Shown in pieces: positions 11,685-59,379 of a stretch of 64,000 nucleotides of DNA. Below the pieces are notes generated by a model. That model saw only the letters and a program-made list of their open reading frames with translations. It was not told the DNA's origin and did no database searches. The position numbers were made by a program, and so were the translations under genes. The first letter of the stretch is position 1; each line of letters begins with the position of its first letter. Origin of the DNA: Antechinus flavipes. Taxonomy: Eukaryota. The stretch is taken from contig NC_067401.1 in the NCBI RefSeq assembly GCF_016432865.1, positions 185,566,001 through 185,630,000 on the forward strand, written 5' to 3'.

Positions 11685-11713
11685 GTTCCTGTATTTACCA
11701 GTAGGGGGCGCTG
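11685..11713 (+). promoter_or_regulatory. CTCF site CCAGTAGGGGGCGCTG (11698-11713) with an upstream-motif-like AGTTCC
   Basis: Matches CCASYAGRKGGCRS with no mismatch. Confidence 0.75.
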
Positions 11714-12149
11714 CAGTCATGTGATGGAAGTGTACATACAGTGTGACGACTCCTCCAAACCACAGTAACTTTTTCCAGAAAACTCACTCCCTTTTCTGCA
11801 TATCAGTATCCCGCCCTCCATTTTAGGGTTGGTCAATTTGCATATCGACATCCAACACCCTAAGGTTGGCTAATTAGCATAAGTGGGCTCTCTATAAGCC
11901 GCCACCTCCAACCCAGTACCGGGGGAAGGAAGGGGTATCATTTTCCTGCAGAAGAAACTGGCCCCGACCCTTTCATTGCCCCTTTTACAAACCTGGCTCT
12001 TCTCATCCGAAGCAGAGAGCATGTGCTAAATAAATACAACTTGACTGATTCATGTCTCAAATTTGTGTTTCTCCCCCTCCTTCCGCCTCTCCACTACTAG
12101 AATGACTCACTGAGCATGAACCAAGGTGCCTGTAGGCGCTACCAAAACA

Positions 12150-12900: not shown

Positions 12901-13009
12901 TCGCTTGGCTCCTTTTTCTCTTTTTCTCTCTATCACTTTTCCTCCTCGGCTCTTTCTCTAGAAGACACTCCTCGAGGGACATTGACATCCCACTGATAAC
13001 ACCCCCTCC

Positions 13010-16000
13010 ATGGCAGGTAAGGGTATCATCTATGGAGGTAATTAGGAATTCCTAGGGCAGAATGGTTACTGGGCAGGGATGGGAGGGATTCTATCAGAGG
13101 GATAAGTGAGGATGGGCAAACCTCCAGTTATCCTTCATTCTTTTATCTCTTAACCTTTGACTTGAAGGTTAGGAATGGGATATCAAGGGAGACATCTCCT
13201 GTGAATGTAGTTGAACCTTCTCTCCGTTCTACCTCCTCCATCTTTGTCTCCAGGTGTTTGTTTAATTGTTTTTTCATTTCTTCCTTCCTCTGTGTGTTTC
13301 CCCTTAGTTCTCTGGGGGAACTTGAAAAAGGCAAGGAGGTCACTCTACTCACTATTTCCCTCTTCCATATCACCTTCCTACAGGTTATTTACCCCCCAAA
13401 GGCTATGCCCCATCACCCCCATACCCAGTGACCCAGTCTACCTCATATTCCAATCCTGCACCTGCCCCAGGCCACATTGTCAACCTCTTCCCTTCCCCTG
13501 GTCCTGTGGCCCCCTTGGAACCAGAACCAGTTACTGTTCCCTTTCTGCAGTTGCCTGGAGTCCCTTCTGGCCTGGAATTCCTTATACAGGTGAGTTAGAA
13601 ATATGGGCGAGGAAAGCTCTGTCATCTGGATCCTAAGTCTTTTTCTCACACACATTATTTCATGTAGTCCTTACACTGTGGTGTGCAATAGGTTAAATCC
13701 AAATATTATACAGGCAAGTTAGAAATATGAGGGAGGAAGGCTCTGTGGTCTTAGTTAGGATCACAGAGAGACTTAGAATCCAGATCCTATTATTTCATGT
13801 AATCCTTACAGTGTGGTGTTCAATAGGTTAAATCCAAATATTATGCCCATATTTTAGCTAAGGAAATAGAGATTGTAGATTGTTACTTGGGTGGGATGGA
13901 ATAGTGATACAAAATGAATTATTTGTATATATATATAAAATTATAGTCCTTGGCTTCAAGGAGTTTATACTCTGATAAAGGAGATAAGACCATGCATAAT
14001 GTAAGTGACATGAGAGGTATAAAGTTCTAGAGAATAAGAAGGAGAAAAACTTACTTTTGAAAGGAGATTGTGGTAGTAATGAATCAGAAAAGAGTTCTGG
14101 GAAGAAGAACTAGAGTCTTAAAGGATGATAGAATTTGCATAAGTTGGGGAGGAAGAACTAAAAAGGCATGAAAGAGAAAGTAGTAGGGAATATAGCTGGA
14201 AATTTAGGCTTTCTTTCTAGCTCTATGGGGTAGCAGATAAGTATGTTTGTATATGTCTCTCTTTCTAGATTGATCAGATCCTGATTCATCAGAAGATTGA
14301 GCGGGTGAAGGGTAAGTGGGGTATGATTGTACCCAGATATAGAAAATGATAGATTAGAGAATGGTTGAAGTAGGAGCTGGGAAAGGAAATTTCACGGCTA
14401 GAAATTAGTAGGATAAAAAAATGAGGAGAGCCTGCATCTTCTTCTCGAAGTCATTTTATCAGTTCCCTGTAGGTTCACCTATCATTTTTAGGCCAATTAC
14501 TCCCAGATACACATATATCTATAGTCCTAGAATCCCTCAGTTGCATTCTTTCCTAATAGACAATTGGACATTTTCTTAAAAAATTTTTTTTTTGTTGTTA
14601 TCTTTTGTTTTTACATCACTGTCATTTTACAATGCTTTTTTTTTTTCTCATTTCTTCCCCTCAGTGATGAATCCCTAATAACAAAGAATAAAAAAGAAAG
14701 GAAAAAAGTTGTAGTTCAGCAAAACTAAGCAACATAGAGATCAAGTCCAACGTTGTTGGCATCATTCCACACTCCTCACTTCTAAAAAGACAGGAAATTA
14801 TATTATGTATATTTCAATGTAATATTCAGTTTCAATTTATTTTATCCACTTACATTGTTTAAGTATTCATGTATACTGTTTTTTTGGTTTTGCTTATCTC
14901 ATTGTATGTGTATTGATCTTACTCTTCTTATGATTCTCTGTATTTTTCACAATGATTATTTCTTGTATCAGAGTAATATTCCATTGTTCTTATACCCCAC
15001 ACGGCACATTGCCAATCTGATATCTCATGGGCATTTTAAGGTTAGCAATTATCAAACAGAGTTCATTATCTGTTCTCTGCCCCAACCTCCATTCTTTCTG
15101 ATATCCTTATTTTTGCTGAAGGTACCACTCTTATAAACAAAGCTTCAGAGGTGTCCTTTTCTTTCTTTCTTACTCTTTGTATGCAAATCAGTTGCCAAAT
15201 CTTGTTCATTCTACCTTTCCCACACTTCTCCCATCTGTCTCATCACATCTGGCCTGAACTACCACAAGAATCTCTAATCAGTCTCTTTGCATCATTTCTC
15301 CTCACCCAATCTACAATTCTGCCAAAAGTTTGACCTTGTTATTCCTCTGTTCAGAAGTTCCAGTAGCTCTTAATTGCTCCTTAGATAATTGTCATTTAAA
15401 GCCCTTTACATTCTGACTTCAGTCTCTCTTTCCTGGATTATTTCATTTTATTCCTCTTCACAAACTCTATTCCAACAAATTGGCTTGCTTTCTGTTACCT
15501 CATAGACAGCATTACATCTTCTGTCTCATTGCCTTTGCTAGAATTTCCCCCTTACTCACCTTTAGCTTATAGAATCCCTAAATTCCTTCCATGTTAAGCT
15601 CAATCTTGTACAAAAAACCTGCTTGACTTGTTCTTTCCTCATCATCAGATATTTCTTTGCTTATATTTGGTACTTTTTTTCATATTGTTTCTTCACAACT
15701 CCCAATAGATTGCTATTCCCAGAGGGCAGGAACAATTTAATTTTTGTCCTTGTTTCATAATCAGCATAATGTCTAGTAAATAGTAAATTCTTAGTAAAGG
15801 CTTATTGAATGAGTGAATGGATGCCTGGAAGTAACCTCAGAAATTTAGTGCTAATTTCCCTGTATTTTCTTCTCCCCATTGCCATCTTGCTTCTTGCTCT
15901 TAGCATTTTTTGGCTGGGATATCTGTAACCGATATGAGCTACATTCTGGAGCAGGGATACTACTGGGCCAAGCAGTTGAGGAAAGCAGCTGCTGTGCCCG

Positions 16001-18436
16001 TCTCTGCTGTGGGGCTCGCCGGCCCATGCGTATCCGTGTGGCTGATCCCAGGAATCGGGAGGTCCTGCACTTAATCCGACCTCTGCATTGTGGGTCCTGC
16101 TGCTGTCCCTGTTGCCTTCAGGAGGTGGGCCTGGATGTCTGAGACTTGAGGAGAACTAGGGTTTGTGGACTACTTAGAGGTAGAATCCAAAAGAGTGATG
16201 GGGAAAATAATTGGAATCTGGGAGACAGAAGTCTAGAACTAGCGATGTTGAGACTTGGGGGAACTAGATTGAGAGACTGAGAGGTCTTAAATCTGATAGT
16301 CTTCTTCTACCATGGGTACAGACCCACAAAGAAACTGGGGCCTGGATTGGGGACTGGAAAGCTTGAAACCTGTTGTGATTCTGTCTTCTCATGGCCTTAG
16401 CTGGAAGTACAAGCTCCCCCTGGCACAACTGTTGGGCATGTACTACAGACTTGGCATCCCTTCCTGCCCAAGTTCTCAATTCAGGATGCAGATCGCCAGA
16501 CACTGCTTCGAGTTGTGGGGCCATGCTGTGCCTGTGGTTGTGGCAATGACACCAACTTTGAGGTAGGGATTAAGAGGCAAGAATTATGACAACGGAATTC
16601 AGAGAACCAGTGAAAACTCTGGAATTTAATATTGTATACCACATAAAACAGGCTTGTTACCTTCCATAAACAGAGAAGTACTCAACAGTCTAACATACTT
16701 ATCTTGATGATCTAAAATGGTCATTCCTAGAAAGCAAGATGGCCAGTTCTAAGATCTCTAATACCAACATCAAAATCCAATATGGTTGCCACTATGATAA
16801 AGATATTTTCCTTCATAAGACGGTAATCCCTATAGTCTAATGCAATGGCTATTTCTGTGATGCCAGATTGTGACCTGCTGTAACATGCCAATACTTGTCA
16901 AAGTAGCTACTTTCTTGGTAATGATGTTTTAATGAACTTTGGAAGGAGAACTTATAGTTTTTACTGTCTTTTTAGAGAAGATTTTTATTACAATAATACT
17001 GTTTTAGCATTCCATTGGTTATCCAATAATTGCCAGGAAGAAAAACCACTTTGCAGTACTCAAGCTCATAAGCATTGGCATTCAATTGATTTCATAAGAA
17101 AGTCAATTTAGTAGTCTGCAATGACCCTAATAGGCCACCTAGTCCAACCTTTTCATTTTACAGGTAAGACTGATGAGATTCATAAAAGTGTTTAATCCTT
17201 CCCCTTTTTTAAAAAAAAAAAAAAAAAAAAAAAGTACTCATCACCAAAATCACAAGATTTGGAAAAAGAATTTTGGTCTGTATCTAATCTAACCCCTTCA
17301 CTTTAAGATTAAAAAGCTGATGCCAGAGTATCAATAACTAATAACTATTCAGTCACTAAATAGTTAAAAATTAATTACTTTAACTTGTGCAAGATCACAT
17401 AGATAGTATGTAGCAAAATTGAGATTCAAACTCAGATTCTGTCAATACAAAGATATTAGCTGAAATAGCTGCTCTCAGCTTATATTTAATGATGAGATAT
17501 AATGTATACCAAAAATAAGTGTGATACAGAATAACATATTATGGAACCAGAGTTAGATTTCTAGATAAAGTATTTTAGAAAATGTTTAAGGAGGAAAAGA
17601 AAGTGGGAAGAGTGGGGCTTGAAATGGCAAAGACTATAGTCAAGCTGAAATGTGACTGTGTTCACCATTATCTCCAAACAGAAGAATTTTCAGGGACTCT
17701 AAGAATCAGTTCAAAAGCAGTAGCTTTGGGATAAATAAAAGAGCTTCTTTGCAACACCATATCTATGCTGTAAATGAAAGTAATTAATTACTCCAAAGAA
17801 GTATGAAAATATTTGAGGGGTTTAGATCAGTTTATAAATAATAGTTCCATAAGTTTAAGATTGTCCAAAATCTTTTTTTTGTTTTGTTTTGTTTTTTGGC
17901 AATTCATTGTGGACCTGTCAGTGTTCTAGCCAGGGGACAAGAGGGGGTAGATTTCTCATATAGCAAATATTCTTTTTCATGCTTCATGGCTCATCACTTC
18001 CCTCCTGGTCATCAGGTGAAGACCAAGGATGAATCTCGGAGTGTGGGTCGGATCAGTAAACAGTGGGGAGGCATTGTGCCAGAGGCCCTCACTGATGCAG
18101 ACCAGTTTGGCCTCCAGTTCCCCCTGGACCTTGATGTTCGATTGAAGGCTGTGCTGCTGGGGGCAGCCTTTCTCATTGTGAGTGCTCATATCCTATGTTC
18201 TCTCTCATCTCTTTTGGGGTGTCTTGTTTTTTTCAAGGGTATGGGATTTAGGGTGGATTATGTGAGAAAAGAAATGGGCAAATGGAGAGGGACAATCCTT
18301 TGGGAAAACATGGATGGGGATCATTCTATGTTAGGATTCCTCTTATTGGTTCCCTATTGGCTCCCCCTCCCAGGATTACATGTTTTTTGAGAAGCCAGGA
18401 GATGCCAATTCGGGGCCCTCAGTCATCACCAGTTAG
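13010..18436 (+). CDS. PLSCR3: Phospholipid scramblase 3, 287 aa; join(13010..13016,13384..13589,14269..14311,15904..16124,16401..16562,18016..18177,18374..18436)
   Basis: [17 protein letters not shown]...[16 protein letters not shown]/...[12 protein letters not shown]...[16 protein letters not shown]...[24 protein letters not shown]...FPLDLDV/DYMFFEK...ITS*; all introns GT-AG with consistent phases; 864 nt. Confidence 0.97.
13582..13845 (+). repeat. Diverged tandem duplication (period about 124-135 bp) at the start of the PLSCR3 intron following 13589
   Basis: gttagaaatatg..gagga..gctctgt and attatttcatgta.tccttaca.tgtggtgt.caataggttaaatccaaatattat each occur twice. Confidence 0.85.
14570..15040 (-). 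mobile_element. Old L1 3' end fragment
   Basis: T-rich marsupial L1 3' UTR-like sequence. Confidence 0.55.
15040..15820 (+). mobile_element. LINE2 3' fragment
   Basis: L2-like text ending ...ttattgaatgagtgaatgg. Confidence 0.65.
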
Positions 18437-21400
18437 AGATGCCCATGTAATCAAAGATAGATATCCTGGCCACAGCATTCCAAGACATCTGCCACTACCC
18501 TGGCCTGGCCCCAGGATCAAAGATGGCCGCTACCATTCTTCAAGATGATGGTGCCTTGAGGAGACAAATCTAGGAGTGGAGGCTAGGGCTTGGGCACCCC
18601 AAAGAAACTTTGAAAGCCTTCATTATGAAGAATGAGGCTCTGTTTTCTACAAGGAGTGGGGACGAACAAATGTTGCATGTGCTGAATGCTAAGAGTTTTT
18701 GTTTAAGATCTCATCCTCTTTTGGCTCTTTCAACACAACCCCAAATTCCCAATGATGGCTATTACTACTTCTCATTGGTATCTTATTCCATAAAGGTTCC
18801 ACCATTCTCACTCCTCTTTTCCTGATATTTCTCTCTTTTTCTATCCCTTATTCTCCTATCTCCAGGCACTAGCTATCTTCCCCTTCTCCTTATTTACATT
18901 GTTGTTTCTACTTCTGCTTCTAATCTAACCCCATCCTATATCCCAGCATCATAATATCAAAAGGAAAAATAGATGTAAGGAGTTGGGGGATTTTATTATA
19001 TCTGCCACTCCCCCTCAAAAATCCTAGAATCATAAACCTTTTTAATTCTTCCTTTTATAAATGAGGAAGCTGAGGCCATGTAAAAGTAAATTGACCAAAG
19101 TCACACAGTGAATTGGTGTTAGGGGGCAGGGATCAATTCCAAATTTTCTGGCTCTCATGATGGTGTTTCTCCCTTCCTCTTTCCCCTCCCTCCCCATTTT
19201 ATGACATACCTTTTCTTCCTTGGCTAAATGAAACCCAAGCCCTGGAACCTTTTTTAGACCCATGGCACTTAAAGAGGAGGTTAGAAAACTCTCCACACAT
19301 ACCTCTTTGGGGACTGAGTCCCAGTACTTGACTGTCAGGTCCCCAAATACTACTTCTCCTGCCCTTTCCCTAGCTGATTCTTATTGAAGCTTTTCTTATG
19401 CTTTATTTAACATTTTTCCAACTCCCTCTGCCTGGATACCAAGGAAGATATTTCTTTGTATGGTGTGTTTACATATATTGTATGTACATATAAGTAGACA
19501 TACACACATATATGTATATATATTAAAAGCTTTCTAACTTTTTGGAAATTAGAAGATTCATATGTGGGATTGGAGAGGGGGCTTGGTATGGAAACAAAGG
19601 AAAATTGAAGATAAGCTCCTGTTTTAAATTGGTCAAAATCTCATTTGGTCTATATTCTGCCAAGGTCAGAGAGAGTTGCTTCCCAACATTACTTTTAGCC
19701 AAGACAACTATGACCATGTTCACACCAAGTCTCAAGAGAAATCTTCCGTGATCCAAAGTTAGAAGACTATGCCCACATAAAATAAAGGTATTTACAACTA
19801 CCCTTTTTGACCCCTGCCTATAAGCCAAGATGCCTTCTCTCATGATCCAGTTGAAGATGACAGCACCAAAAGCTTCTTGAATTGAATGATCTCTAGTGTT
19901 CCACATATTTCAGTAGGTATGCCACATATTTCAGTTTGAATTTTACAGTAGGGTAGGGGAAACAAGGCTCCTGTGGATGGAGTATGCTAAAGCATCAAGT
20001 TCTTGCTTCTTAGGTAGGGGTTGTTGCAAACTAAGCAGAGCCAAATGAATGTGCCTTAGTCTTAGAATTTAGAGGTTTTTAAAAAAGAAGAATTTAGAGA
20101 TAGAAGAAGTCTTTGAGCTTCTATTGTTTCAAAAATGAGGAGTGAAAGTGAAAAGTGAAGTGAAGACTTATAAGAAATCAAATAGTTAACAGCAAATCTG
20201 GGATTTCAACCCAAATCTTCTGATTCCCAATCTTGTGCACTTCCTATTTTTGCATATCTTATACTTGCCATTCTCAGGCAGGTTCTAGGGTACCAAGTCT
20301 GCTCCCTTAAATAACAATCTATCCTGGATTGCAGTAAGAGAGGAAAGAAAAAGGTCAACTCAGTATCATTAACATTATTAGTTCCAAGTGAAGCTCCCTT
20401 CCTATGGGGAGGTTTCTGGTGTGTCATACTTCATCAAAGCTGGAAAATGACGATGAAGATTTCATCCTCTGACAGCAGTCCTGACCTAGTGGCTCAAGGT
20501 ACAGAGAGGTTCCATTGATAACATTCTAGGATTTGCCAGCAGTTTACCCCTAGAGCAGCTGCTCAGATGAAAGAAAAGTTAAAACCTACAAAGGACTTAA
20601 GAGTTGGAGGGATGGGGAGCTGGATCTCTCCAGAGAGTGGAGGGCAGGAAAGAGAATCAGAGGTATGCCTCAGGGGCCTTCAGTTTCAGGAAGAAGAAAG
20701 GTCAGAGAGAGAATGAAGGACTTAAGTGAACAGAAACAATGAAAACTTGGATAACTTCCCTGATTTCTGAGAAGAATCTTGGAGGATAGAGAAAGGCTGA
20801 AGTCTCAGATTCCTGGGGGTTTGGGAGCTGATAGAGACTGGTGTAGTTCTGATTGTGGGCCAGACTTTATCTTCAGGGTTCTAGAGAGCAGAAGTCATAT
20901 TACCTGTCACTCTGAATGTATAGCTGCATTTACAAGCAATGAAAACATCGGATGTTTCTCCCCTGGCAGACTCATATGCTATATGTTGTCCTCTTTGCCC
21001 ATCATTGCTACCTCAAATTTTTTTTACCTCTGGGACCCAAATCAGGGCAAAGTCTCACATGGACTACAAGTACTTTTGTCTGGTCTCCTTGTGTCTCCTA
21101 CAAGCTAACCAGATATAAGGGGAAGGAGAAGGGAGGGAGGGGAAAGGGACAGTGAGAGAAAGTGTGCTCTTACTAGCTCAAGAATCTGTTGTTAAATTTT
21201 CAATGTGAGCTTTACATCTTAGAAATCAGGAGATGTTATAAACCAAGACTTGACTTATTGTTTTCTTGATTTTCTATATATAAGAAAGCGATGGAAAAAT
21301 GTTAATATGCAGATTAGATTTAAATATGTTATGCACACATTTTTGGAGGACTAATTAAATGTTTACTAACACACCCATGGGTCTGAGTCTCACTGGGGGT

Positions 21401-21479
21401 CCGGTTAGGCTGGAACTTTAGAGAAGGTGCAGAGAGGTAAGAAGGAAAGGATCTGTATTATTATTATTATTATTATATT

Positions 21480-21680
21480 TAACATTTATGTATCAGCATA
21501 AGGTTTGCAAAGCCCATTACATATGTGAAGGATTGTTTGATTTTCACAACCTATAAGATAGATGGCTATCATCCCGTTTTTACAGATGAAAAAACAGAAC
21601 AAGAAAGATTATATGACTTGCCCAACATTACATAAATAGTAAATGTTTGAGGCAGGATTTGAACACAAGATTTTTTTCAT
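21480..21680 (-). mobile_element. MIR-type SINE inside the TNK1 remnant
   Basis: atcccgtttttacagatgaaaaaacaga...tgacttgcccaa..taca...ggatttgaacac. Confidence 0.75.
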
Positions 21681-24232
21681 TGCATCACTCAGCTGCAGTA
21701 ATGTACAGCAATAGAATGTTGGATTTTTGAAGGGTTGGAGCCATTTCCTGAGGATTGAGTACCCAGAAAGAGGGCAAGACCAAAATTCTTGTAGACATCT
21801 AGAAAGGAGAGTAGAGAATTTAGTGTGACCCGAGTACCTGGTTTCCCAGACCTTTTTAAAGACTCCAGGAGCACTATCAAACCATCCCCAGATCCTTTTC
21901 CCCTTTGGGATTGCAGAATTCCAGACTTCCAGCAGCTACAACCTTATTTTTCACTTTCAATTGATCTCCCTTGGATCTGAACTGAGTCTTGAAACTTTTC
22001 TTTGCATCTAATAAAGAGGATAAGATGTGGGGGAGAGAGGGAAGAAAGGAGAAAATGGGAATTTGGGATGGAAGAGACGGAGAAGGCAAAATAGAAGAGA
22101 GAAGTAGAGAAAGAATGTATGATGGAAAAGAAGGGAAATGGAGGGAAGAGAATAGCAAAATGAGGAAACGAGATGGGGAAGTTTTTTTCAGGAACTGGGA
22201 TTGATCTCTTGAAGGATGCCCTCCAGATGTAGGAAATTTGATCAGTCAGAAGGATAAAGAATCCAATAGCTAGAGCAACAGCATGATAGTCATGAGAGTA
22301 GAGGGGAGGCTGAAAGATTTGTGTACCACCATAACCCTGACACTAAATGATCAAATAGGTCTGCACCCTAGCCCACGATTCCTTACCTCCAGAGAACATT
22401 TTTCACATCACTTCAAACATTTATATATTTAAGGTAGAGGAGAAGATTCCTGGAGACTAGCATATCTGGTGGGAGGTAAGGGATAGTGTCTCTAGAGCCC
22501 CATTCATTGCTCCACATAATCCTTGTCAAGTTACCTTTTCCCTCCTTCATTTCTTCCTTTTACTAATCTACTACAAGACCTTTTCCTGTTTTCCAGGTTT
22601 CTGACTTCTCTCCATCTCACCACTATCCAAAGGGGAATCCCATGGTGATTCCCACCATGATGTAACAACTCTTAGTCCAAAGTCCACCAGCCTAATAGTT
22701 TGTAGGGAGAGAAGAGGAACAAGTTTTGAGTATCCAGATCATCATAACACTACTTCCCAGCCCTATGATGTAGGTTCTGGTCCCTGCCTTTTGGGACAGG
22801 AACAGAAAAAAGGGAGACATAGAAATTAGGATGTTGGGAGCTGAGGGAACAAGCCAAGAGTACAGGCAGCCCAGTGGAATCGATTTTATCCTCTACAGGA
22901 GACAAGGGAAATAAGAAGCCTTCATAATGCCATTCTTCCTTTCCTTCCCTGGAAATTCTTCCTAGCCTTAACTTCCTGACTTCTTGCAACAGCATTTCAA
23001 GAAGCATTTCATTCTCTTCCTGACAAACCATTCTTTAGAGTCCCAAGGAGCTGGGGGGTTATCAGAAATCTACCTTAGCATTTAGAGAAGGGATCCTTCA
23101 TGGGGTCATGAAGTTTAGGCACATGAAATCTTATGACATACGCCCAAGGAATGTGCCTTTGGACCCTCTTGAACTATCCTGAAAAGACTTCATTGGCACT
23201 GGGACATAAGCACAGAGTAGAGAGTTGACGAGAAAAACAGTAGATTTTAGGGTTTGGAGACTAGAAAGGAAGTGGACTCCATTCAGGAAGGCAGCTGGGA
23301 GGTTAGGAATGAATGAAGCTTTATTTTGCAGGGCATCATTTAGAGCTCCAAGTTACTTAAACTGTATCTAACTTGACCCTATCATTTTATACCTGAAGTA
23401 ACTCAAGCGCAGAGAGGAAATGACTGGCTCAAAGTCACAGTGGGAAAATTTGAATCCAAGTTGTCTGGCAGCATCCTGGGTAAATAGAAGAACTTGAAAA
23501 GAAGTACAGTGAGAATAAAGAGGCTCAGAAACAGCTGGGAAGGAAAGTGTCTAGAAATTCTACCATCACGACCCTCATGTGCAGTCCCGAGTTCTTGGTG
23601 AACCTTACCAGAATAGTCTGCTCCTTCCCCAGTACATAATTGGAATCAGCTACTTGAGAGATACCTCTTACTCTAATATCCGAGAAGGAAAATTTTGGGG
23701 AGGGGAATGAATAAATATTTCTTTGGCTCAGAGGCCTCATTATCTATGACCTAAAAACATTATGAAAGCCTTGGAAACACCCCGTAGGATAACCCATGCA
23801 TTGATTCACTCTACTTTTGATCTCCTGAAACATTGCATTTCCCTACCTTGGAGTCCCATTCTTAGGTTTGAACATTGACCAATGTCTTGTTAAGGTTTCA
23901 TTCAACAGTGGGGCAAGAATATAAAGGGATAGTCAGCAGAGATTCTGGATTTGGGGGATGAAAAGGATTTAAGGTTAGAAATATAATCCAGGGCTAGAAG
24001 AGACTTTAGAGATCATCTAATGGAAACAGGTTGAGAGGAATTATGCAATGTATCTAAGGTCACACTAGCAGTTAAATGAGAGAGTCAGATTTAAACTTTA
24101 ACTCACTATGTCCAAGTCTAACACTCTTTTCACCGATGGAATATTAAGGGAATAGAATTTGGAAAAAGGAGGTATTTAGATGTCCCAGGGTGGTGTGGAG
24201 TGCATCAAACTGAGATCTAAAAGGGTTTAGAG

Positions 24233-24352
24233 GGGCAGCTAGGTGGCACAGTGGATAGAGCACCAGCCTTGAAGTCAGGAGGACCTTAGTTCAAATCTGA
24301 TCTCAGACACACTTCCTAGCTATATGATCTTGGACAAGTCATTTAACACCTC
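24233..24352 (+). mobile_element. tRNA-derived CORE-SINE (WSINE1/SINE1-like)
   Basis: gggcagctaggtggcacagtggatagagcacc...agttcaaatc...ggacaagtcatttaac. Confidence 0.85.
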
Positions 24353-27300
24353 AAGGGGTGGGGAAAAGGTTTAGAGGAACAGGATGAGGGGCCTTATGAG
24401 TTGGAACCAGAAACATAAGAGATCATTAACTGGACTTCCCACTACTCCAGGTTCATGAAGTCAAAATACTTAGACTGTAAAATGTTAAACTGTTATGCTA
24501 CAGTTCTTTTACTGTCCTGCCTCAGTTTCCCTAATTATCCTGACCCAGTCTTGACTCAGTTTCTCTGCTTCAGTTTATAATAATCAGCTCAAAGCTCAGT
24601 CCTGCAAAACCTCCCCTCCCTCTCTATCAGAATATTTGATAAGGATAAAAGATCTTGTATTTTAGAATATCAGAAAGCCTCTCCCCATCCCAAACTAGTG
24701 GAATGTCAGATACTATCTTATCAAGATCTCTCCCCATGTCAAGGGTTCCTCATCCCATCCCCCATGCCCTGTCAGAACCAGATTATCAGAGTCCCATTCC
24801 CGTTTTCAGCACCCTGACTTCACTCCTACCTCAGTATACCCCCTGAGTCTGAGCCATGTGTATATAGGTCATTGAGGACTCACATTGTTTGCTAGATTCT
24901 TGGAGATGATAGTCTCATTCAGCCCTGGGACCAAACCATGGATCCATTTGGTCCCAGTAAATAATTTACTCCCCATTTAATAAATTATTAAATACTCTCT
25001 AATCTCTATCTTGCCTCAGTTTCTCCGACATTACAAGCTAATTGTAGCAAGTAAAATTGGACCCACTGGACTTTCCAATCAGATGCAAACATAGGATCTC
25101 TTCCTTGGGAAGTACTTTGGCAGGGGCTGGGGGGAGCAATAGGGCCTTTCTTCCATTTTTGATAACCTATGATAATAATAAAAATATCTATGAAAGTCCT
25201 AAATAAGGAAACTCTACTTTTTTGAGTCATTCTTGTTCCCCAGGTAAGGAATGCTCCTTCCATATGTTCCAGGAAAGGAATACCTTGATACTCTGAGATA
25301 CCACCTCTAGGCTGGGAAAACTCCTATTCCACTGATGTGGTGGAAGAAAACATACTCAGCTGAGACATCTTTCTCCCAAATAAGGAAACTCTCCTCCCTC
25401 AGAATTCCCCACTGAATAATTTTTCAGAGAAAGTAATCCATATCCTTGAAATATCTCTCCCTTTTCCCTCTCACCAAAAAAAAAAAAAAAAAAAAAAAAA
25501 ATCCCCACAGAAAACCCTAGCAGCTCCTCTTCTGAGATTCCTAATTAAGAAACTATTTCTAATATAGTTCCATCCTCTACTCCTACCCTAAAAATCCCTC
25601 CCTTGGAACTTAGATTCCTCTTTACACCACATCCTCTAAAAATCTCTTTAATAACTTTCAGATGAGAAGAGCCCTGACTTCAGGGTAACAAATCATTCCC
25701 TTCCTTGGGATTGCCCAATTTAATCTAGTTCGATAAATCTCAGGTGCCGCTGCATCACAAAACATTGTGGCGGAATGAGGATGTGAGATGGAGGTGGTAA
25801 TAGGAGGGAGAGAAATAGCATAGTTCCTACCCTTGAGTGTGTAAACTAGTAGAACAGCCACAGATAAATAACCTTCATTGATGCCTTCTCAGATAATGTC
25901 CCTTACCGTACCCCGAATGTGACCAATTTAAAAAAAAAAAAAAACTGCTCTCTCTTTCCCTGCCACACATTATTTAACAGAAGAGAAAGAAAGTAAGAAA
26001 AAAAATGAAGTTTGAAAACAATAAAAAGAGTGGGGAAATTACATTGAGACCAAAGGAAACAATTGGAAGCAAGAGTGATGAAAACTTAGGTGGGGGAAAT
26101 ATTAAGATTAGAAAAGGGATAAACAGTAAAGGACAAGAATCAAGAAAGGGGAAGGGAGAAAGAATTTGAAAAAGAGGTGGACCCAGGAAAAAGGAAAACA
26201 AAAGGGAATAGTGGGTTCAAATTTAGTTCAGTTCTTGCCAAGCTTTGGTCTCATCAAGTTCATCTATATATTTGACACCACTGCCTGATGAAGCCTTGTC
26301 TCACCTACAACCAACCTATGTTCCAAAGGTCAATCTTTGCCCCTTCAAGTCATTAATGCTGAAACTGGTTACAAAAAAGTAGACACTGAAATACATCCAT
26401 ACTGTTCTTCTGTCACCTAAATGAAAGAACAAATGCCAAGACAGGCAAAGATAACAATAATTATGATTATTTGATAATAATAATACCCACGAGAGTCTCA
26501 AGTAAGGAAACTGTCCTTTCCTAGGTAAAGAAAACCTTGTATTCACAGAACCATATGACCTCAAAGGGAACTGGGCTCAAGAATTCCCCGCTAAGCATCA
26601 TTCTCTCTCAATGGAAGCCATCACTGCAGAAGTCAAAGACACATAAGGATCAAACTAGAATGAATCAAAGAAACTGGCCTAGCTTATTTAAGATCTTTTT
26701 TCAAGGAATACCTAGTTTCAATTATTGTAATCAGCTGAAAATAGGGTTCTCCTAACTTATGGTTAGTAACTTAGAACAGGTCCAGAATTACTACAATTTA
26801 CTTCACTATCTTTCCAAAGAACTTTCAGTTCATGTGATCACAACTCTTCCACATTTTCAAAATCACTAGCCCCTGGTGTATTCTCAGTGTGGCTGTGGAA
26901 AAGACACAAGCAGTGTGGATCAATGCCAGAAGACTTCCTAGAAGAAGAAAGTGTGGAATGTAGTTTTGAAGAAGGGAAGGCACAGAGCTGAGAAGGGAGC
27001 AGTTAATTCCTTGAGGTCGGGGCCTATTTAACTTTCATCCCTGAATCCTTAATGTTTAGCACAGGGCATACTATATATAGGCACTTAATAAATGTTTATT
27101 GTTTGATTGAGCAGCATATTTGCCTTAGTTATATTGCACTATTTAAAAAAATTTGAAGCCTCAATTCAGCAAACATCAAGCACCTAAAATAGGGATCACA
27201 CCTCTTTTTTTCTTGTCTTCTCAAAGAGAGAGTAAAGAAGTTCACAATGCACAATATGAGTCAAAATATGATTCAGATAATTTATTCCTATAGGGAAAAA

Positions 27301-27455
27301 AATGCTACACATAGGATACTTATAAGCACATATTAATAGAATTAATTAAATAGGATTCAGTATTTCAATTAATCACTGTTAATGATCGGATGGGAAGATA
27401 AAATTCAAATCTTTTTTGCACTTCACCTCAACTAATATCTGTTCAAACAACTGCC

Positions 27456-27458
<3 letters not shown>

Positions 27459-27488
<30 letters not shown>
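27459..27488. repeat. (AC)15 microsatellite
   Basis: Read directly. Confidence 0.95.
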
Positions 27489-27493
<5 letters not shown>

Positions 27494-27542
27494 TATACAG
27501 ATATGTTAGAGATCCTCATTTTTTAAAATACACATTTATTTT

Positions 27543-28381
27543 TCTTTATTCTTTTTTGTAAATAGTATTTTGTTTTTCCAATTACAGGTAAAGATAGTTT
27601 TATGCATTCATTTAAAAAAATTGATTAAAGCTTTTTATTTTTCAAAACCTATGTATGAACAATTAATTCTTCAACATCAGTCCTTGCAAAACCTTGTATT
27701 CCAATTCCTGCCCCCTTCTCCCACTCCCTCCCTTAGATGGCAAGTAGTCCAATATATGTTAAACACAGTAGAAATATATGTTCAATCCAATATATGCATA
27801 CATATTTATACAATTATCATACCGCACAAGACAAATCCAATCAAATCAGTGTAAAAAAAAAAGGAGAAACAAACTAAAATGCAAGCAAACAACAAAAAGA
27901 GTGAAAATGCTATGTTGTGAACCACACTCAGTTCCCACAGTCCTCTCTCTGGGTGTAGATGGCTCTCTTCATGACTGAACAATTGGAACTGGTTTGAATC
28001 ATCTCATTGTTGAAGAGGGCCACGCCCATCAGAATTATCCATCACATAATCTTGTTACCTTGTATCCCCTGGTTCTGCTCATTTCACTTAGCATCAGTTC
28101 ATATAAGTCTCTCCAGCCTCTCTCAAATCCTGATGATTGCTTCTTACAGAGCAATAGTATTTCCTAACATTCATATACTATTAAGCCATTCTCCAATTGA
28201 TGGGCATTCATTCAGTTTCCAGTTTCTTGCCACTATAAAAAAGGCTGCACATTTGGGTCCCTTTCCCTCCTTTAAGATCTCTTTGAATATAAGTCCAGTA
28301 GAAACACTGCTGGGTCAAAGAGTATGCACAGTTTGATAACTTTTTGAGCATTGTTCTCTAGAATGTTTGGATCTATTCACA
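27543..28381 (-). mobile_element. 5'-truncated L1 3' end with a diverged 14-bp TSD (tacacatttatttt 27529-27542 / tatacattcatttt 28382-28395)
   Basis: L1 3' UTR and ORF2 tail similar to the 8555 element; TSD 12/14 identical. Confidence 0.8.
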
Positions 28382-28395
28382 TATACATTCATTTT

Positions 28396-29335
28396 AAATA
28401 AGATTTTGAGTTTCAAATTTTTTTTCTCTCTCCTTCCCATCCATCCCCTCCAAGACAGAAAGCAATCTGATGAAGATTATACATGTACAATCATATTAAA
28501 TATTTCCACATTAATCATGAAGAAGAAAGAGAAAAAAAGGGAAAAGCCACACATACCAAAAAAGTGAAAATAGTGTTTCAATCTGCATTCATTCTTTCTC
28601 TATATGTGGATAGTATTTTTTAATCATAAGTTTTTTGGAATTGTCTTGGGTCATTGTATTGCTAAAAAGAGCTAAATCAATCAAAGTTCATCATTGCAGT
28701 GTTACTGTATATGATGTTCTCCTAGTTCTCCTCACTTCACTCAGCCTCATTTCATGTAAATCTTTCTAGGTTTTTCTGAAATCTGCCTGCTTATCATTTC
28801 TTATATCACAATAGTATTCCATTACATTCATACACCACAGCTTGATCAGCCATTCATTTTCCAATTCCTTGCCACCACAAAAAGAGCTGCTACAAACATT
28901 TTTGTACATGTGGGTCCTTTTCTTTCTTTTATGATCTTTTATACAGATCCAGACTACTAGATCAAAGAGTATCTATAGTTTGCCCTTTTGGTATAGTTCC
29001 AAATTGCTCCCAAGAATGGTTGGATCAGTTCACAACACCACCAGCAAAGCATTAGCATACCAGTTTTCCCCATCTTTTCTAATATTTATCATTTTCCTTT
29101 TCTGTCATATTAGCCAATCTGATAGATGTGAGGTGGTACCTCAGAGTTGTTTTAACTCTAATCAGTGGTGATTTCCGTGGAGCATTTTTTTTTCATATAG
29201 CTGTAGATAGTTTTAATTTTTTCATCTGAAAATTGCCTATTCATATCCTTTGATCATTTAGCAATTGAGAAATGATTTATATTCTTATAAATTTGAGTCA
29301 GTTCTCTATATATTTGACAAAATGAGGCCTTGATG
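28396..29335 (-). mobile_element. Older L1 3' fragment adjacent to the previous element
   Basis: Second copy of L1 3' UTR/ORF2 tail sequence (gaatggttggatcagttcacaac, gtggtacctcagagttg). Confidence 0.8.
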
Positions 29336-30184
29336 GAGATACTCCTTCTAACTCAAATTCTAACTGATATAGTATCCCTCAGAGAAAGGCTAGACTTTCT
29401 CATTTAGGATTCTAAGAGATCAAGGGTGTCTTTCTTCTTTTGTCTCTTTTTTTGTCAGAGAAAAATTATTAATACTCTATATTTTGGCACAAATATGCCA
29501 GAAACAACTTATTAAGAAGAGAAATGTCCATGGTTTCTAGATACCCTCCTCCCATGTGTGCTTGGATATCTCTTTAACACTAACTAATTTAAGGTAATTT
29601 GCAGGAATATTAAACTGGAAAATTACAAGAAGAAAAAATATCGTTTGAGGTTAACATTCTACTCAATCACTCCATCTTTAAATTCTTAGTTCTTTCTTTA
29701 ACCATTCCACTAACAAGCTCTAACTAAACTATCAGGTAATCAAAGGGATCTTCTTCCTTTCCTCAATACCTGAATCCTTTCAAAAAAGAATGGGGGCTCT
29801 TAGGAGTGTCTTCTTAGTTTAGGTTCTGTTTGGGGACAAAAATGAGATACTTGTAAGTCACTGAACAGATATCACAATAATATTAACTTAATGTTAACTT
29901 AGCTCTAACATAGCAAAGATATACAACAATAATAGAGTTAGCTTCTATAGAAGCTTAGCAAACCATCTCTTCCCCCATATTTCCATGTGGAAATTCCTTT
30001 GAGCAGTATGACAGGGTACAGTGATTTCCTACGGTGTTCAAGCAAACAACAAGCTGGAGGGGCCCCAACTTCACTTGGGTGGAACTTTTATGTCCTTATG
30101 AGACCAGGAATCTGTGTCAAGTAAAACAGGGATCATTCAGGTTCCAGGAACAGCTTTGTTTTCTTTTAGGGAAAATCTCAATTC

Positions 30185-53264: not shown

Positions 53265-54955
53265 TCAAGAGTGTTGCTCTGCAAGAAGAGATCTGGATCT
53301 GGAGGAAAGGGATAAAAGGAAAAAGGAAGAAATAAAGACCGGCTTATGATGGGATAGACGAGAATATAATGATTAGAATGGCACATGCCCCATACTCCCA
53401 ACCTCAGACCCATTCCCCAACTCACTCTATTATACAGCTGATGAAACCTAGAATTAATGAGGCAGCTGAAAAAAACAGGAGCAGAATCTTGGCTTCCCTT
53501 AGGTCCTGTTTTCCTATGGGAAAAAGGGTAGAGTGAAAGTTGCCATGCTGCAAAGGAATCTGTAGTACTTCTTTTTGAAAGGAAGTCAGGGAGAGGATGG
53601 TGGGAAGTCATTGGAGAAGAAATTAAATCCCAGATAAGAGTTTGAGGGCCACAAGATTGGATCCCCAAGGGCAGGAGCTTCTGGAAAGGGTGGACAAGGT
53701 ACTTAGATGTGAGGTTGACCTGGGTTACAACGCTTGAGAGCCCAGCAATGAACCTCAACAGCTTTGCATGTGGAGCAGTTGTACAGGGTAGTCCTTCCAC
53801 CTGCAAGATTGGCTGGAGGTGATGATTAAGGGAGAGCCCAGCTCCCTCCCTCTTAGGGCCTCAGTAGTGATGATGATGGTGTCTCCTCACCCTTTCCACC
53901 CAACCTTTGTTCTCAGAGATCCAGGTGGTCAAACTACCCCTTTGCCCTCAACCCATATGCTATACTCACGGCAGGCAGGAGGGCACAGAGCTGAGAAAAT
54001 CAAGGAGAAAAGTGTCTGTCCCCTATCCAACACCCTTCTCCCACCTCCCACCCCCAATGCTTCATATCCATCAGGATTCCAGGTATCTCTCCCTTCCCAC
54101 CCTTCATGCCTGATACCTTGCCTCATATATTCAGGAAGTTTAGATTTCTGAAGCCATTGCCAATAGGTGGGAAGGGAAAACAGGTAACCTTTGATTTCTG
54201 GGGAAAAGGGCAGCAAATAGTTTGTTCATAAAACTTCTCCTTGGCCCCCAACCCTGGTTCTCACTCTCATTCCCCTCTCCCCACTTCCTTCCCTCTCCTT
54301 TTATATTTTTCCACTTTTCTTATCACCAATCAATACTTCTTTTATCCCATGCCCTCTACCCTTTATCATTTGAAATAGATCATTTTCTCCTCTTTATCCA
54401 CTTAAGGTGTCACTTTATCTCCTCACCAAGGACTGTCATTACTCTGTGTGTTTTTTCTGTAATTCTATCCATGGATACTTCATCTGGAGAAAAAGAGGAG
54501 ATGACAAAGTTCTAGAGAAAATCTTATAGATCCTAGAAGATAGAGTCAACCTCCAAGGGAGCTAGTCTTCCTTCATGGATCTCCTGGGCCTACAGTAAAA
54601 GTAAATCATATAATAGGATTCAAGGGAAATCTTATCAATAGATTTATTGGGTGGTGATGTGAAGAGAATTAGAGACTTGAATGAGAAGAGGGAAGGACTA
54701 TTCTAACAGATGGCTTTCACTTCAGGTACCTGAGAGATTTGGAGGAGATAGAATCAGGACTAGAGGAAAGGATTCTTAGGTCCCACCTAAGGCAAAGGTT
54801 GAGAAGTTCCAGCTGGTTTTACAGTCTCCCCATTCTGAACTTATCTGTTCACAGAGATGAGCCAGGCGTGCAGAAAGGTCTCTAGAAGGGAGGCGGCAGA
54901 AGATACAGGCTTGGGAGGTGCTTAAGAAAAGATAGCCAAGCATTGGGACCCACAT
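53265..54955 (-). CDS. TMEM95: Sperm-egg fusion protein TMEM95, 176 aa; complement(join(53265..53298,53426..53513,53720..53800,53970..53990,54117..54197,54427..54483,54787..54955))
   Basis: MWVPMLGYLFLSTSQACIFCRLPSRDLSARLAHLC.../DEVSMDRITEKTHRVMTVL/EIK...LPEYMRQ/ALCPPAC/RGRTTLYNCSTCK...CNP/GKQDLREAKILLL.../SRSLLAEQHS*; seven exons with GT-AG introns, 531 nt in frame. Confidence 0.95.
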
Positions 54956-58076: not shown

Positions 58077-58892
58077 TCAATGTCGGACAAAACGCAGCGA
58101 TCGGGAGTTCAGCAGGTCCTCAGGGTCAGGGAAGACAGAGTCAAGTCGAAAACCATGTTCTAGAGCCACCTGGAGCACTTCCTCCAAGAACCCAGGTGTC
58201 CCTACTACCTCGCGCTTCTCACCAGCTTCTCCTACTACCCATAGTTGCTGCAATCCTAGACGTCGATACTCAACCTCTGGGAGTCCTTCTGGGCAGGGAG
58301 CCCATTCCAAATGGAAATGGGGACTTCCTTCTCCTTCCCCTTCAGCAACTCCGAACCGGGCTCGAAGTACCCCAAGACAGATGGGATCTGTACAGAAGAT
58401 ATTGGCTCTAAAGGTGTCAACTCGAGCAGCACTGAGTTCATAGTGGTGGGGACCTCGACGAGCTGAGAAGTGGACCAGTCGGGGGGTAGCATCCACATCT
58501 GCATGAAACAACGCAGCTGTGATCACCTCAGTTCCCTGAGTTACCTCCAACTCCCTAAGTGCTTCTAGTAGGGGCTGGATCTGGTAGAAATCAGCCTCAG
58601 CTCTCAGGAGCGCTGTCTCCCCATAACCCCTAGGCAAGTCCAGGCAGCCCAGACGCAGGAAATTGAGGATGTGACGAAAGGCTTTACCATCCCGATCGAT
58701 AAAGTAGTAGTTGCTACCTTGAGAGCCAGAATTGGGTGGCAGTGCCGCACCCTCTCTGAACATGGCTCCCAACATTGAGTCTGGGAATCGAGTTAGAGTT
58801 TCCAAGGTAGTAGCATACAGGGTTCCTCCCACATTTAGTGTCACAGGCCCCCCAAAAGAGGGTGCCTGGGAGGGCATTGGGGGAGGAGGAAT
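58077..58892 (-). CDS. KCTD11: BTB/POZ protein KCTD11, single coding exon; 271 aa from AUU (58892), 266 aa from in-frame AUG (58877), 232 aa from downstream AUG (58775)
   Basis: GGPVTLNVGGTLYATTLETLTRFPDSMLGAMF...YFIDRDGKAFRHILNFLRLG...DSVFPDPEDLLNSRSLRFVRH* is unambiguous KCTD11; the start choice is inferred. Confidence 0.96.
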   Translation of the reverse strand: MPPPPMPSQAPSFGGPVTLNVGGTLYATTLETLTRFPDSMLGAMFREGAALPPNSGSQGSNYYFIDRDGKAFRHILNFLRLGCLDLPRGYGETALLRAEADFYQIQPLLEALRELEVTQGTEVITAALFHADVDATPRLVHFSARRGPHHYELSAARVDTFRANIFCTDPICLGVLRARFGVAEGEGEGSPHFHLEWAPCPEGLPEVEYRRLGLQQLWVVGEAGEKREVVGTPGFLEEVLQVALEHGFRLDSVFPDPEDLLNSRSLRFVRH

Positions 58893-59379
58893 TTTGAATA
58901 GCACCAGAGAGATACAGATGGGAAGAGGCTGGGCTTTTGGCGGGAGTCTGGGGAGGAACTGATTTGTAGATTTACAGCAGCTGTTTTCGAAGTAACGAAA
59001 AGGTTTAGGGGTACCCAGAAGCTGCCTCCCCGGCACAGCCGGGCTAAATCTACAGCAGGGAATATTTTCAATAAAGTTTGGGAATACAGAGCAGTCCCGC
59101 GGCTGATTTCAAGGAAAAAAAGCAGTTTGGGTTCACCTCAGCTGGGATGTTGACCCAAATTAGGGGCAGCGGCCAGCTAAAACAGCTGGCCTGTTGGTCC
59201 AGAAATGCTAGAGTCCGAGTACTCCAAGATATGAATGGAGGGTTTTTCCTGGCGTACCTGAAGATTAAATTTCAGGGTTCCAGCCGACAGATCGGCGGTA
59301 TAAAAGGCTGATTTCTGGATAATCAATGCAGTCTTTTTTTTGGGGGGGGGGAAGAGGGGGAGTGGTTTGCAGAGGGTGT

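What the first reader, a model, noticed from the sequence alone, without database searches (positions are those of the whole stretch)
20494..25092. TNK1 is a dead gene at its syntenic locus (candidate unitary pseudogene)
Seen: ordered - strand remnants of nearly every TNK1 module (SAM, Gly-loop, VAVK, catalytic loop, DFG at 22676-22684, kinase C-lobe, Pro-rich region, UBA), several with surviving AG/GT signals. They are disrupted by stops (TAG 22623-22625, TAA 22421-22423, TGA 22403-22405, TGA 22242-22244), frameshifts (two in the UBA exon, one before TIRLVDFG), HRD to YDD (22738-22746) and an AG to AT acceptor at 23205. All flanking genes are intact, which argues against general sequence error. 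Known: TNK1 is an ACK-family ubiquitin-binding tyrosine kinase linked to interferon signalling, and mouse knockouts were reported to develop spontaneous tumours. Inference: a lineage-wide loss of a putative tumour suppressor in a group noted for neoplasia. I do not know whether this loss has been published.
Basis: partly seen in the sequence, partly recalled or inferred. Interest (0 to 1): 0.85.

Follow-up and report, generated by a model that had tools for sequence, protein, structure and literature searches.

The report
Dead TNK1 kinase gene in marsupials
The stretch is the decayed remnant of the tyrosine-kinase gene TNK1, sitting where the live gene sits in platypus and placental mammals. 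The same breaks occur in koala and monito del monte, so the gene died in an early marsupial ancestor and not specifically in the tumour-prone dasyurids.

Summary
The window is Antechinus flavipes (100% identical to GCA_016432865.2). On the minus strand between PLSCR3 and TMEM95/KCTD11, at 25115-20494, lie ordered remnants of TNK1. In platypus and tenrec an annotated TNK1 of 681 and 664 aa occupies this position.

A frameshift- and intron-tolerant alignment of six placental TNK1 proteins scores 239-318. Shuffled versions score about 85 (z 12-23), and ACK/TNK2-like and other kinases score 75-115. The catalytic/DFG exon, the C-lobe exon and the last UBA exon are each significant on their own. The SH3 and proline-rich parts are not detectable.

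Four disabling lesions are shared by Antechinus, Sarcophilus, Sminthopsis, koala and Dromiciops:
- a TAA stop at 23670-23668;
- three 1-nt frameshifts.

Exon remnants diverge at the same rate as surrounding DNA, and the three codon positions diverge alike. TNK1 was therefore dead before the Australidelphian ancestor, and probably before all living marsupials split; opossums were not tested.

The suggested link to dasyurid neoplasia is not supported. I found no paper reporting the loss. It is an ordinary kind of event (a unitary pseudogene) affecting a moderately interesting gene.

The parts
25035..25115 (-). TNK1 exon 1 remnant, 5' half (start of the SAM domain). GTA at 25115-25113 sits where the initiator ATG is expected. 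One frameshift.
   Evidence: With the insertion removed, the sequence reads 'VLPKEEIL-CLHLI-G/VQWVQFYLLQL-AFNILQSKYFDFM' against placental 'MLPE..LWLL.LLR./IQLAQFY..LEELNVT.PEHFDFV', z 5-6. Five-species DNA alignment.
24489..25034 (.). 546-bp insertion that splits the SAM exon. Present in the three dasyurids, absent in koala and Dromiciops.
   Evidence: In koala the two halves abut (L006 29798/29799) and in Dromiciops they are contiguous.
24407..24488 (-). TNK1 exon 1 remnant, 3' half ('FNILQSKYFDFM').
23844..23905 (-). TNK1 exon remnant for Myotis residues 67-87 ('LNETLTRHWSMFKPKN/WDSKV'). It carries a 1-nt frameshift found only in dasyurids.
   Evidence: z 4.7, with 0 of 60 shuffles reaching the score. 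The frameshift is absent in Dromiciops and koala.
23565..23736 (-). TNK1 exon remnant covering the linker and the glycine loop. It has a TAA stop at 23670-23668 shared by all five marsupials, a TAG stop at 23652-23650 (dasyurids only), a frameshift, and a 2-codon deletion before the loop. GxGxxG has become GADYSG.
   Evidence: 'GAGTAAGAGG' is identical in all five species. The Antechinus copy alone is weak (z 1.8), but the orthologous Dromiciops copy matches at 38/61 residues and the koala copy scores 108.
23085..23207 (-). TNK1 exon remnant with the VAVK motif ('VPVPMKSFQ...'). The acceptor dinucleotide reads AT at 23207-23206 instead of AG. There is a frameshift near Myotis residue 196.
   Evidence: Platypus and Dromiciops have CAG before GTCCC.
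22612..22907 (-). TNK1 exon remnant with the catalytic loop and DFG. Features: YDD 22746-22738; extra nucleotides at about 22701-22699 (+1 in all five species, +2 in dasyurids); DFG 22684-22676; a 22-bp deletion after DFGL (dasyurids only); a 1-nt deletion at about 22656-22654 (all five); TAG 22625-22623.
   Evidence: z 12.9 with Myotis and 10.4 with platypus. DNA alignments with platypus.
22200..22487 (-). TNK1 exon remnant, kinase C-lobe. Stops at TAA 22423-22421, TGA 22405-22403, TAG 22345-22343 and TGA 22244-22242. A 1-nt deletion between 22273 and 22272 is shared by all five marsupials.
   Evidence: z 21.9 with Myotis and 17.0 with platypus. tblastn E=1e-7. DNA alignments.
20862..20931 (-). 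Possible remnant of the first UBA exon ('KCSYTFRVT-GNMTSAL/RTLKI'). It is collinear with the other remnants but not significant on its own.
   Evidence: z 0.5. It is found at the same relative place in Sarcophilus and Sminthopsis.
20494..20590 (-). TNK1 last exon remnant (end of the UBA domain): 'FHLSSCSR/VNCWQILECYQWNLSVP*'. It has a frameshift found only in Antechinus and a TGA at 20496-20494, eight codons before the normal end.
   Evidence: z 10.7 with Myotis and 7.3 with platypus. Frames shown. Sarcophilus, Sminthopsis and Dromiciops read through without the frameshift.
13383..19748 (+). PLSCR3, the intact flanking gene (six coding exons), convergent with the TNK1 remnant.
   Evidence: The annotated Antechinus protein P0088 maps at 293/295 identical residues with no stop or frameshift. 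Gene call.
53721..54955 (-). TMEM95, first two exons (54955-54779 and 53801-53721). This is the next gene upstream of TNK1, as in placentals.
   Evidence: tblastn E=4e-16 and E=2e-6. Pfam PF15203 at E=1.4e-14.
58080..59108 (-). KCTD11 open reading frame.
   Evidence: Pfam KCTD11_21_C at 2e-23 and BTB_2 at 1.5e-19.

Best explanation
Window 25115-20494 (minus strand) is a unitary pseudogene: the only, ancestral copy of TNK1 (an ACK-family non-receptor tyrosine kinase), dead and decaying in place. The therian ancestor had a working TNK1 tail-to-tail with PLSCR3, as platypus and placentals still do. On the marsupial stem the gene lost its function. The first disabling hit was one of the lesions now shared by all five marsupials examined: a TAA stop in the linker/glycine-loop exon, two 1-nt frameshifts in the catalytic-loop/DFG exon, or a 1-nt deletion in the C-lobe exon. 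Since then the locus has drifted as neutral DNA. Each lineage has added its own stops, indels, a lost start codon, a lost splice acceptor, insertions and deletions, and the SH3 and linker exons have become unrecognisable. The remnant encodes no kinase and is expected to do nothing.

Shown here: homology to TNK1, position, lesions, sharing of lesions, and neutral divergence.

Inferred: the timing (before the Australidelphian crown, probably before crown Marsupialia) and the absence of any other TNK1 copy.
For: Position:
- In platypus a 681-aa gene with SAM_TNK, PK_Tyr and UBA_TNK1 domains lies on the opposite strand 1.8 kb downstream of PLSCR3.
- In tenrec a 664-aa gene with the same domains lies 1.1 kb downstream and spans 4.7 kb.
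- The remnant lies 0.75 kb downstream of the last PLSCR3 coding exon, on the opposite strand, and spans 4.6 kb. TMEM95 and KCTD11 follow.

Homology:
- TNK1 from six placental orders scores 239-318 (z 12-23).
- ACK/TNK2-like and other kinases score 75-115 (z -0.8 to 3.6).
- Segment z-scores are 12.9, 21.9 and 10.7. tblastn gives E=1e-7.

Same remnant in other marsupials:
- Sarcophilus 274 against 110+-11.
- Sminthopsis 190 against 112+-14.
- Dromiciops 346 against 178+-13.
- Koala 449 against 158+-11.

Shared lesions:
- Four lesions sit at identical alignment positions in all five species.
- Koala was fetched after the first four species had been analysed, and it carried the predicted lesions.

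Neutrality:
- Exon remnants and non-exon DNA diverge alike. For Antechinus-Dromiciops the values are 0.224 and 0.241 (p=0.39).
- The three codon positions do not differ (p 0.09-0.47).

Annotation:
- No protein-coding gene is called within 10 kb downstream of PLSCR3 in Antechinus, Sarcophilus, Sminthopsis, Dromiciops, Trichosurus, Petaurus or koala.
Against: - No whole-genome search was possible, so a second, intact TNK1 elsewhere (a duplicate or retrocopy) is not excluded.
- The named homologue list was cut at 120 rows, all placental, so it says nothing about marsupials.
- Exact placement of frameshifts depends on my own aligner and on MAFFT.
- Third codon positions diverge slightly more than first and second in every pair. 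The excess is not significant and the pairs are not independent.
- Transcription of the relic was not examined.
Confidence: 0.93

Rival explanations
1. The locus is a dead copy, but a functional TNK1 survives elsewhere in marsupial genomes (a relocated duplicate or expressed retrocopy). In that case this would not be a unitary loss.
For: Nothing positive. It simply could not be excluded. No whole-assembly search was available, and the homologue list is truncated.
Against: - The dead copy occupies the ancestral position and keeps its introns, so it is the original gene and not a retrocopy.
- None of the 120 best named TNK1 proteins is marsupial, although seven annotated marsupial genomes are in the same database.
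- Neutral decay for more than 50 My fits loss of the function rather than its transfer to another copy.
Confidence: 0.04
2. The disruptions are assembly or sequencing errors in a live gene.
For: None.
Against: - The same stop and the same three frameshifts occur in five assemblies of five species made by different projects.
- The neighbouring PLSCR3 reads through perfectly.
- There are far too many lesions for this: more than eight stops, about ten frameshifts, a 546-bp insertion and a 22-bp deletion.
Confidence: 0.005
3. The relic has been taken over for a non-coding role, for example a transcribed pseudogene or regulatory RNA, or 3' regulatory sequence of PLSCR3.
For: - It lies only 0.75 kb from the end of the PLSCR3 coding sequence.
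- The last UBA exon is the best-preserved short piece (14/23 residues identical).
Against: - Remnants diverge at the same rate as flanking non-coding DNA in every species pair.
- Dromiciops has lost 214 bp of the C-lobe exon and gained 2 kb inside the locus. Dasyurids have a 546-bp insertion.
Confidence: 0.03

Closest known systems
[quoted passage not shown]
   Same: - Same genomic position and orientation, between PLSCR3 and TMEM95.
- Same exon order.
- Recognisable SAM start, glycine loop, VAVK, catalytic loop, DFG, C-lobe and C-terminal UBA end.
- Specific similarity to TNK1 rather than to TNK2.
   Different: - No open reading frame remains: start codon lost, more than eight stops, about ten frameshifts, one splice acceptor lost and one exon split by an insertion.
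- The SH3 and proline-rich parts are unrecognisable.
- It evolves neutrally.
TNK2 / ACK1, the paralogue
   Same: Same family architecture (SAM, kinase, SH3, UBA). It presumably remains in marsupials and is the obvious candidate for any overlapping function.
   Different: ACK-like proteins with a GTPase-binding (CRIB) region score at background against this locus (75-114, z up to 2.3). TNK2 lies elsewhere in the genome.
Other clade-wide unitary pseudogenes in mammals, including the ELP5 and ROS1 candidates noted by this scan in the same genome
   Same: A single ancestral copy that decays in place, carries lesions shared across a clade and evolves neutrally.
   Different: A different gene. The scan's ELP5 and ROS1 notes are unchecked.

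Membership tests
TNK1 orthologue (ACK family of non-receptor tyrosine kinases) | Conserved position: convergent with PLSCR3 and downstream of TMEM95 and KCTD11 | tested here: met
   Platypus and tenrec gene tables. Window layout.
TNK1 orthologue (ACK family of non-receptor tyrosine kinases) | Tyrosine-kinase domain sequence closer to TNK1 than to TNK2 or other kinases | tested here: met
   Six TNK1 proteins score 239-318. ACK-like and other kinases score 75-115. Exon z-scores are 12.9 and 21.9.
TNK1 orthologue (ACK family of non-receptor tyrosine kinases) | N-terminal SAM_TNK domain | tested here: met
   Aligned as a remnant with z 5-6 after removing the dasyurid insertion. Koala gives z 8.2. 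Pfam itself gives no hit on the pieces.
TNK1 orthologue (ACK family of non-receptor tyrosine kinases) | [quoted passage not shown] | tested here: not met
   Myotis residues 389-470 and platypus exons G and H score at or below the shuffled level. The domain is decayed or deleted. This is expected of an old pseudogene and does not argue against ancestry.
TNK1 orthologue (ACK family of non-receptor tyrosine kinases) | C-terminal UBA domain | tested here: met
   The last exon gives z 10.7 and 7.3. The first UBA exon is only collinear, with z 0.5.
Unitary pseudogene | The reading frame is disabled | tested here: met
   Stops, frameshifts, lost ATG, lost acceptor and an inserted 546 bp.
Unitary pseudogene | It is the ancestral copy: syntenic and intron-bearing, not a processed copy | tested here: met
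   Exon remnants are spread over 4.6 kb in the order and spacing of the live gene.
Unitary pseudogene | The orthologue is functional in outgroups | tested here: met
   Platypus exons from the VAVK exon onward read cleanly. There are annotated full-length TNK1 proteins in all four placental superorders. This is evidence from annotation and open reading frames only.
Unitary pseudogene | Neutral evolution of the remnants | tested here: met
   Exon and non-exon divergence are equal, and the three codon positions are equal, in six species pairs.
Unitary pseudogene | No functional copy elsewhere in the genome | not testable with these tools
   No whole-assembly search of marsupial genomes was available, and the protein list is truncated.

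The most novel reading that the evidence does not exclude
TNK1 was lost on the marsupial stem, before opossums split off. Every living marsupial would then be a natural TNK1 knockout, more than 55-80 My old. Whatever TNK1 does in placentals would be done without it, or by TNK2, in a whole mammalian infraclass. That includes binding ubiquitin condensates, feeding into IFN/STAT1 signalling and restraining Ras.

A rough clock supports this. At residues conserved between bat and platypus, the marsupial copies had accumulated 1.2-1.8 times as much neutral-type change before the Australidelphian crown as after it. The opossum split is only about 5-13 My older than that crown (PMC5715987).
Probability: 0.65. 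Interest if true: 0.45.

Novelty: new member of a known kind. Interest (0 to 1): 0.38.

Why it matters
TNK1 is a poorly understood kinase. [quoted passage not shown]

A clade-wide natural knockout shows that the gene is dispensable for a whole mammalian radiation. It also offers a comparative system for asking what compensates for it. Practically, it warns against carrying TNK1-based reasoning or reagents from placentals over to devil or koala disease work.

The finding does not explain dasyurid or devil tumours. The loss predates the dasyurids by tens of millions of years and is shared with koala and monito del monte.

I found no paper in the searchable library that mentions TNK1 together with marsupials or Monodelphis. 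Genome-wide gene-loss tables, which were not searchable, may already list it.

Tried and rejected
- **Pfam on 10 stop-free Antechinus pieces and 10 Dromiciops pieces.** No kinase, SAM_TNK or UBA hit. The pieces are too short and too decayed, so this says nothing against homology.
- **phmmer of the DFG piece and the UBA piece against PDB.** Nothing relevant.
- **The search for homologous proteins with the 132-aa piece.** Nothing.
- **tblastn with every platypus minus-strand piece.** Without composition correction the output was swamped by proline-rich low-complexity hits. With correction the C-lobe exon was the top hit of the whole window, but only at E=5e-4. This is why I wrote a frameshift-tolerant aligner.
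- **First aligner settings (cheap intron jumps).** These chained junk over the part of the platypus locus that lacks exons. Penalties were raised afterwards.
- **MAFFT's apparent +1 insertion at 'SLESCL'.** Rejected as an alignment artefact, because the marsupial frame reads 'GCLYSWLVPSAP' without a shift.
- **Arg343 stop.** It is TGA in Sarcophilus and Dromiciops, TGT in Antechinus and Sminthopsis, and GGC (Gly) in koala. I rejected it as a shared lesion.
- **Ancestral-state dating that required Dromiciops to agree.** Biased, and dropped.
- **Loci that could not be read.** The Gracilinanus and Eretmochelys PLSCR3 look-ups failed, so no opossum locus was obtained.


Full report
**What the window is.** A PLSCR3 exon in the window matched marsupial phospholipid scramblase 3. 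The locus fetched around the Antechinus flavipes PLSCR3 gene (L002, GCA_016432865.2, CM028220.1) is 100% identical to window 12000-29751. The window is therefore from the yellow-footed antechinus, a dasyurid.

The gene order in the window is:
- TMEM256 (DUF423), called in L002 upstream of PLSCR3;
- PLSCR3 on the plus strand, coding exons 13383-19748, matching its annotated protein at 293/295 residues with no stop;
- the stretch in question on the minus strand;
- TMEM95 on the minus strand (exons at 54955-54779 and 53801-53721; tblastn E=4e-16 and 2e-6, Pfam PF15203 E=1.4e-14);
- KCTD11 (58080-59108, minus strand; Pfam KCTD11_21_C 2e-23).

**Where TNK1 should be.** In platypus (L005), a gene with a 681-aa product carrying SAM_TNK, PK_Tyr_Ser-Thr and UBA_TNK1-sid3 lies on the opposite strand 1.8 kb downstream of PLSCR3. 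In tenrec (gene table only), a 664-aa gene with the same domains lies 1.1 kb downstream and spans 4.7 kb. In seven annotated marsupials no protein-coding gene is called within 10 kb downstream of PLSCR3. These are Antechinus, Sarcophilus, Sminthopsis, Dromiciops, Trichosurus, Petaurus and koala.

**Getting a reference.**
- Stop-free pieces of the remnant gave nothing in Pfam, PDB or the protein database.
- I therefore took an intact platypus exon (L005:19496-19918, minus strand) and searched the representative library. This returned P0104.
- The name search and Pfam identify P0104 as Myotis lucifugus TNK1, 671 aa, with SAM_TNK, kinase and UBA domains.
- The 120 best named relatives are all placental TNK1 and cover all four superorders. 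That list is truncated, so it carries no information about marsupials.

**Is the remnant really TNK1?**
- I wrote a protein-to-DNA aligner that allows frameshifts, in-frame stops and intron-like jumps, and used shuffled proteins as controls.
- Myotis TNK1 against window 19000-27000 (minus strand) scores 283. One hundred shuffles give 111+-12 (maximum 142), the reversed protein 97 and the plus strand 90.
- TNK1 from six placental orders scores 239-318 (z 12-23). ACK/TNK2-like proteins and other kinases score 75-115 (z -0.8 to 3.6). The match is therefore specific to TNK1, not generic to kinases.
- Segment by segment: catalytic loop/DFG exon z 12.9 (platypus 10.4); C-lobe exon z 21.9 (17.0); last UBA exon z 10.7 (7.3); residues 65-89 z 4.7; SAM z 3.4 (5-6 once the insertion is removed); VAVK exon z 2.8; glycine-loop exon z 1.8.
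- The SH3 exons, the proline-rich linker and the first UBA exon are at background level.
- The weak glycine-loop exon is vouched for by its orthologues. Dromiciops matches at 38/61 residues ('SLKYLIPEGVV/CSGG--GAGYFGIVH*GLWTL') and koala scores 108.
- Plain tblastn with a placental TNK1 finds the C-lobe exon at E=1e-7, with the stops visible.

- The remnant actually begins at 25115, where GTA replaces the ATG.
- The SAM exon is cut in two by a 546-bp insertion (25034-24489) that koala and Dromiciops lack.

**Other marsupials.**
- The same remnant is present downstream of PLSCR3 in four other species: Sarcophilus (274 against 110+-11), Sminthopsis (190 against 112+-14), Dromiciops (346 against 178+-13) and koala (449 against 158+-11).
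- DNA alignments, with platypus exons as the frame reference where available, show four disabling lesions at the same position in all five species:
  1. TAA within 'GAGTAAGAGG' (window 23670-23668), opposite placental 'EPEGGLK';
  2. one extra nucleotide between the catalytic loop and TIR.ADFGL (two in dasyurids; window about 22701-22699);
  3. a 1-nt deletion at Y-I-M|G-G (window about 22656-22654);
  4. a 1-nt deletion in A-R-R-C-W (between window 22273 and 22272).
- HRD was already YHD in the common ancestor (koala and Dromiciops TAT CAT GAC) and became YDD in dasyurids.
- Koala was fetched after these lesions had been defined in the other four species, and it carried all of them. That is a fulfilled prediction.
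- Lesions found only in dasyurids: the 546-bp insertion, TAG 23652-23650, the AT acceptor, the 22-bp deletion after DFGL, and the stops at 22423, 22405 and 22345.
- TGA 22244-22242 is shared with koala but not with Dromiciops.
- Dromiciops alone has a 214-bp deletion of half the C-lobe exon and about 2.8 kb of insertions.
- Antechinus alone has the frameshift in the last exon.

**Neutrality.** In six species pairs the exon remnants diverge like the surrounding non-exonic DNA. For Antechinus-Dromiciops the values are 0.224 and 0.241 (p=0.39); for Antechinus-Sarcophilus they are 0.071 and 0.071. The three codon positions do not differ significantly (p 0.09-0.47), with a small, consistent excess at third positions.

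**Timing.**
- Dromiciops is the sister of all Australasian orders, and Didelphimorphia is the first split (PMC2910653).
- Lesions shared by Dromiciops, koala and dasyurids therefore put the inactivation before the Australidelphian crown, dated at about 50-69 Mya. The didelphid split is dated at about 54-83 Mya, only about 5-13 My earlier (PMC5715987).
- A rough clock uses residues identical in Myotis and platypus. It compares marsupial-versus-reference change with marsupial-versus-marsupial change. It gives a neutral period before the crown of 1.2-1.8 crown ages, with bootstrap limits of roughly 0.6-3.2.
- Taken literally this is too old, so the figure is inflated by alignment error and by any change that happened before inactivation. 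Even so, it indicates a death well before the crown, and hence probably before opossums split off. That remains a prediction, because no opossum locus could be fetched.

**What it is and how it works.** It is a unitary pseudogene: the original TNK1, disabled on the marsupial stem and decaying neutrally ever since. It makes no kinase. TNK2/ACK1 is the obvious candidate for any overlapping function (family description in PMC10047419).

- The background claims stand. [quoted passage not shown]
- The loss is not a dasyurid feature, however. It is shared with koala and monito del monte and predates dasyurids by tens of millions of years. It offers no specific explanation for neoplasia in that group.

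**Novelty.** No paper in the library mentions TNK1 together with marsupials or Monodelphis, and none with pseudogene, opossum or Tasmanian devil appeared among the listed hits. Unsearchable supplementary gene-loss tables may already list it. The kind of event is ordinary. The gene and the breadth of the clade make it moderately interesting.

**Limits.**
- No whole-genome search for another copy was possible.
- No placental genomic DNA was available.
- The platypus locus lacks the first exons.
- Frameshift positions rest on my own aligner plus MAFFT.
- No expression data were examined.

Noticed in passing
window 53721-54955 (-): The first two exons of TMEM95, a sperm-egg fusion factor in placentals, read open and conserved. 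Exon 1 reads 'MWVPMLGYLFLSTSQACIFCRLP...' and hits Pfam PF15203 at 1.4e-14. About 28 kb of repeat-rich DNA separates TMEM95 from the TNK1 remnant. In tenrec TNK1 starts within 6 kb of PLSCR3.
   Followed up: partly
window 24489-25034: A 546-bp insertion found only in dasyurids sits inside the TNK1 SAM exon. Copies of 'GAAACTGAGGCA(A/G)G' occur near both ends. The element type was not identified. Sminthopsis has a further ~780 bp of sequence about 160 bp inside this insertion's upstream end (near window 24873).
   Followed up: partly
L004 (Dromiciops) 27700-29200 (-): A roughly 2-kb insertion inside the dead TNK1 locus carries a 382-aa open frame (27758-28903). The overlapping frames are rich in Pro, Gly and Arg and end in 'RGGGRG'. 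It looks like a processed retrocopy of some gene. Pfam finds nothing.
   Followed up: partly
L006 (koala) 10001-23759: The longest annotated koala PLSCR3 product (421 aa) has a gene range that encloses the TMEM256 (DUF423) gene. This suggests a TMEM256-PLSCR3 read-through model. The Dromiciops PLSCR3 range is similarly long (13.7 kb).
   Followed up: no
window 9158-9649 (-) and 45447-46184 (-): Long open frames with LINE-1 ORF2-like C-terminal sequence ('...CWRGCGKTGTL.HCWW.CE.IQPFWRAIW...'). These are L1 fragments in the gene-poor stretches.
   Followed up: no
L005 (platypus) 21350-21326: Reading on past the end of the platypus VAVK exon as first drawn gives '...VVLGTQLHMV', which resembles the 'GQPLQMV' of placental TNK1. 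The true donor site therefore probably lies a few codons further downstream, and the next exon starts at 'MELAPLGS'. This affects only where the exon boundary is drawn.
   Followed up: no
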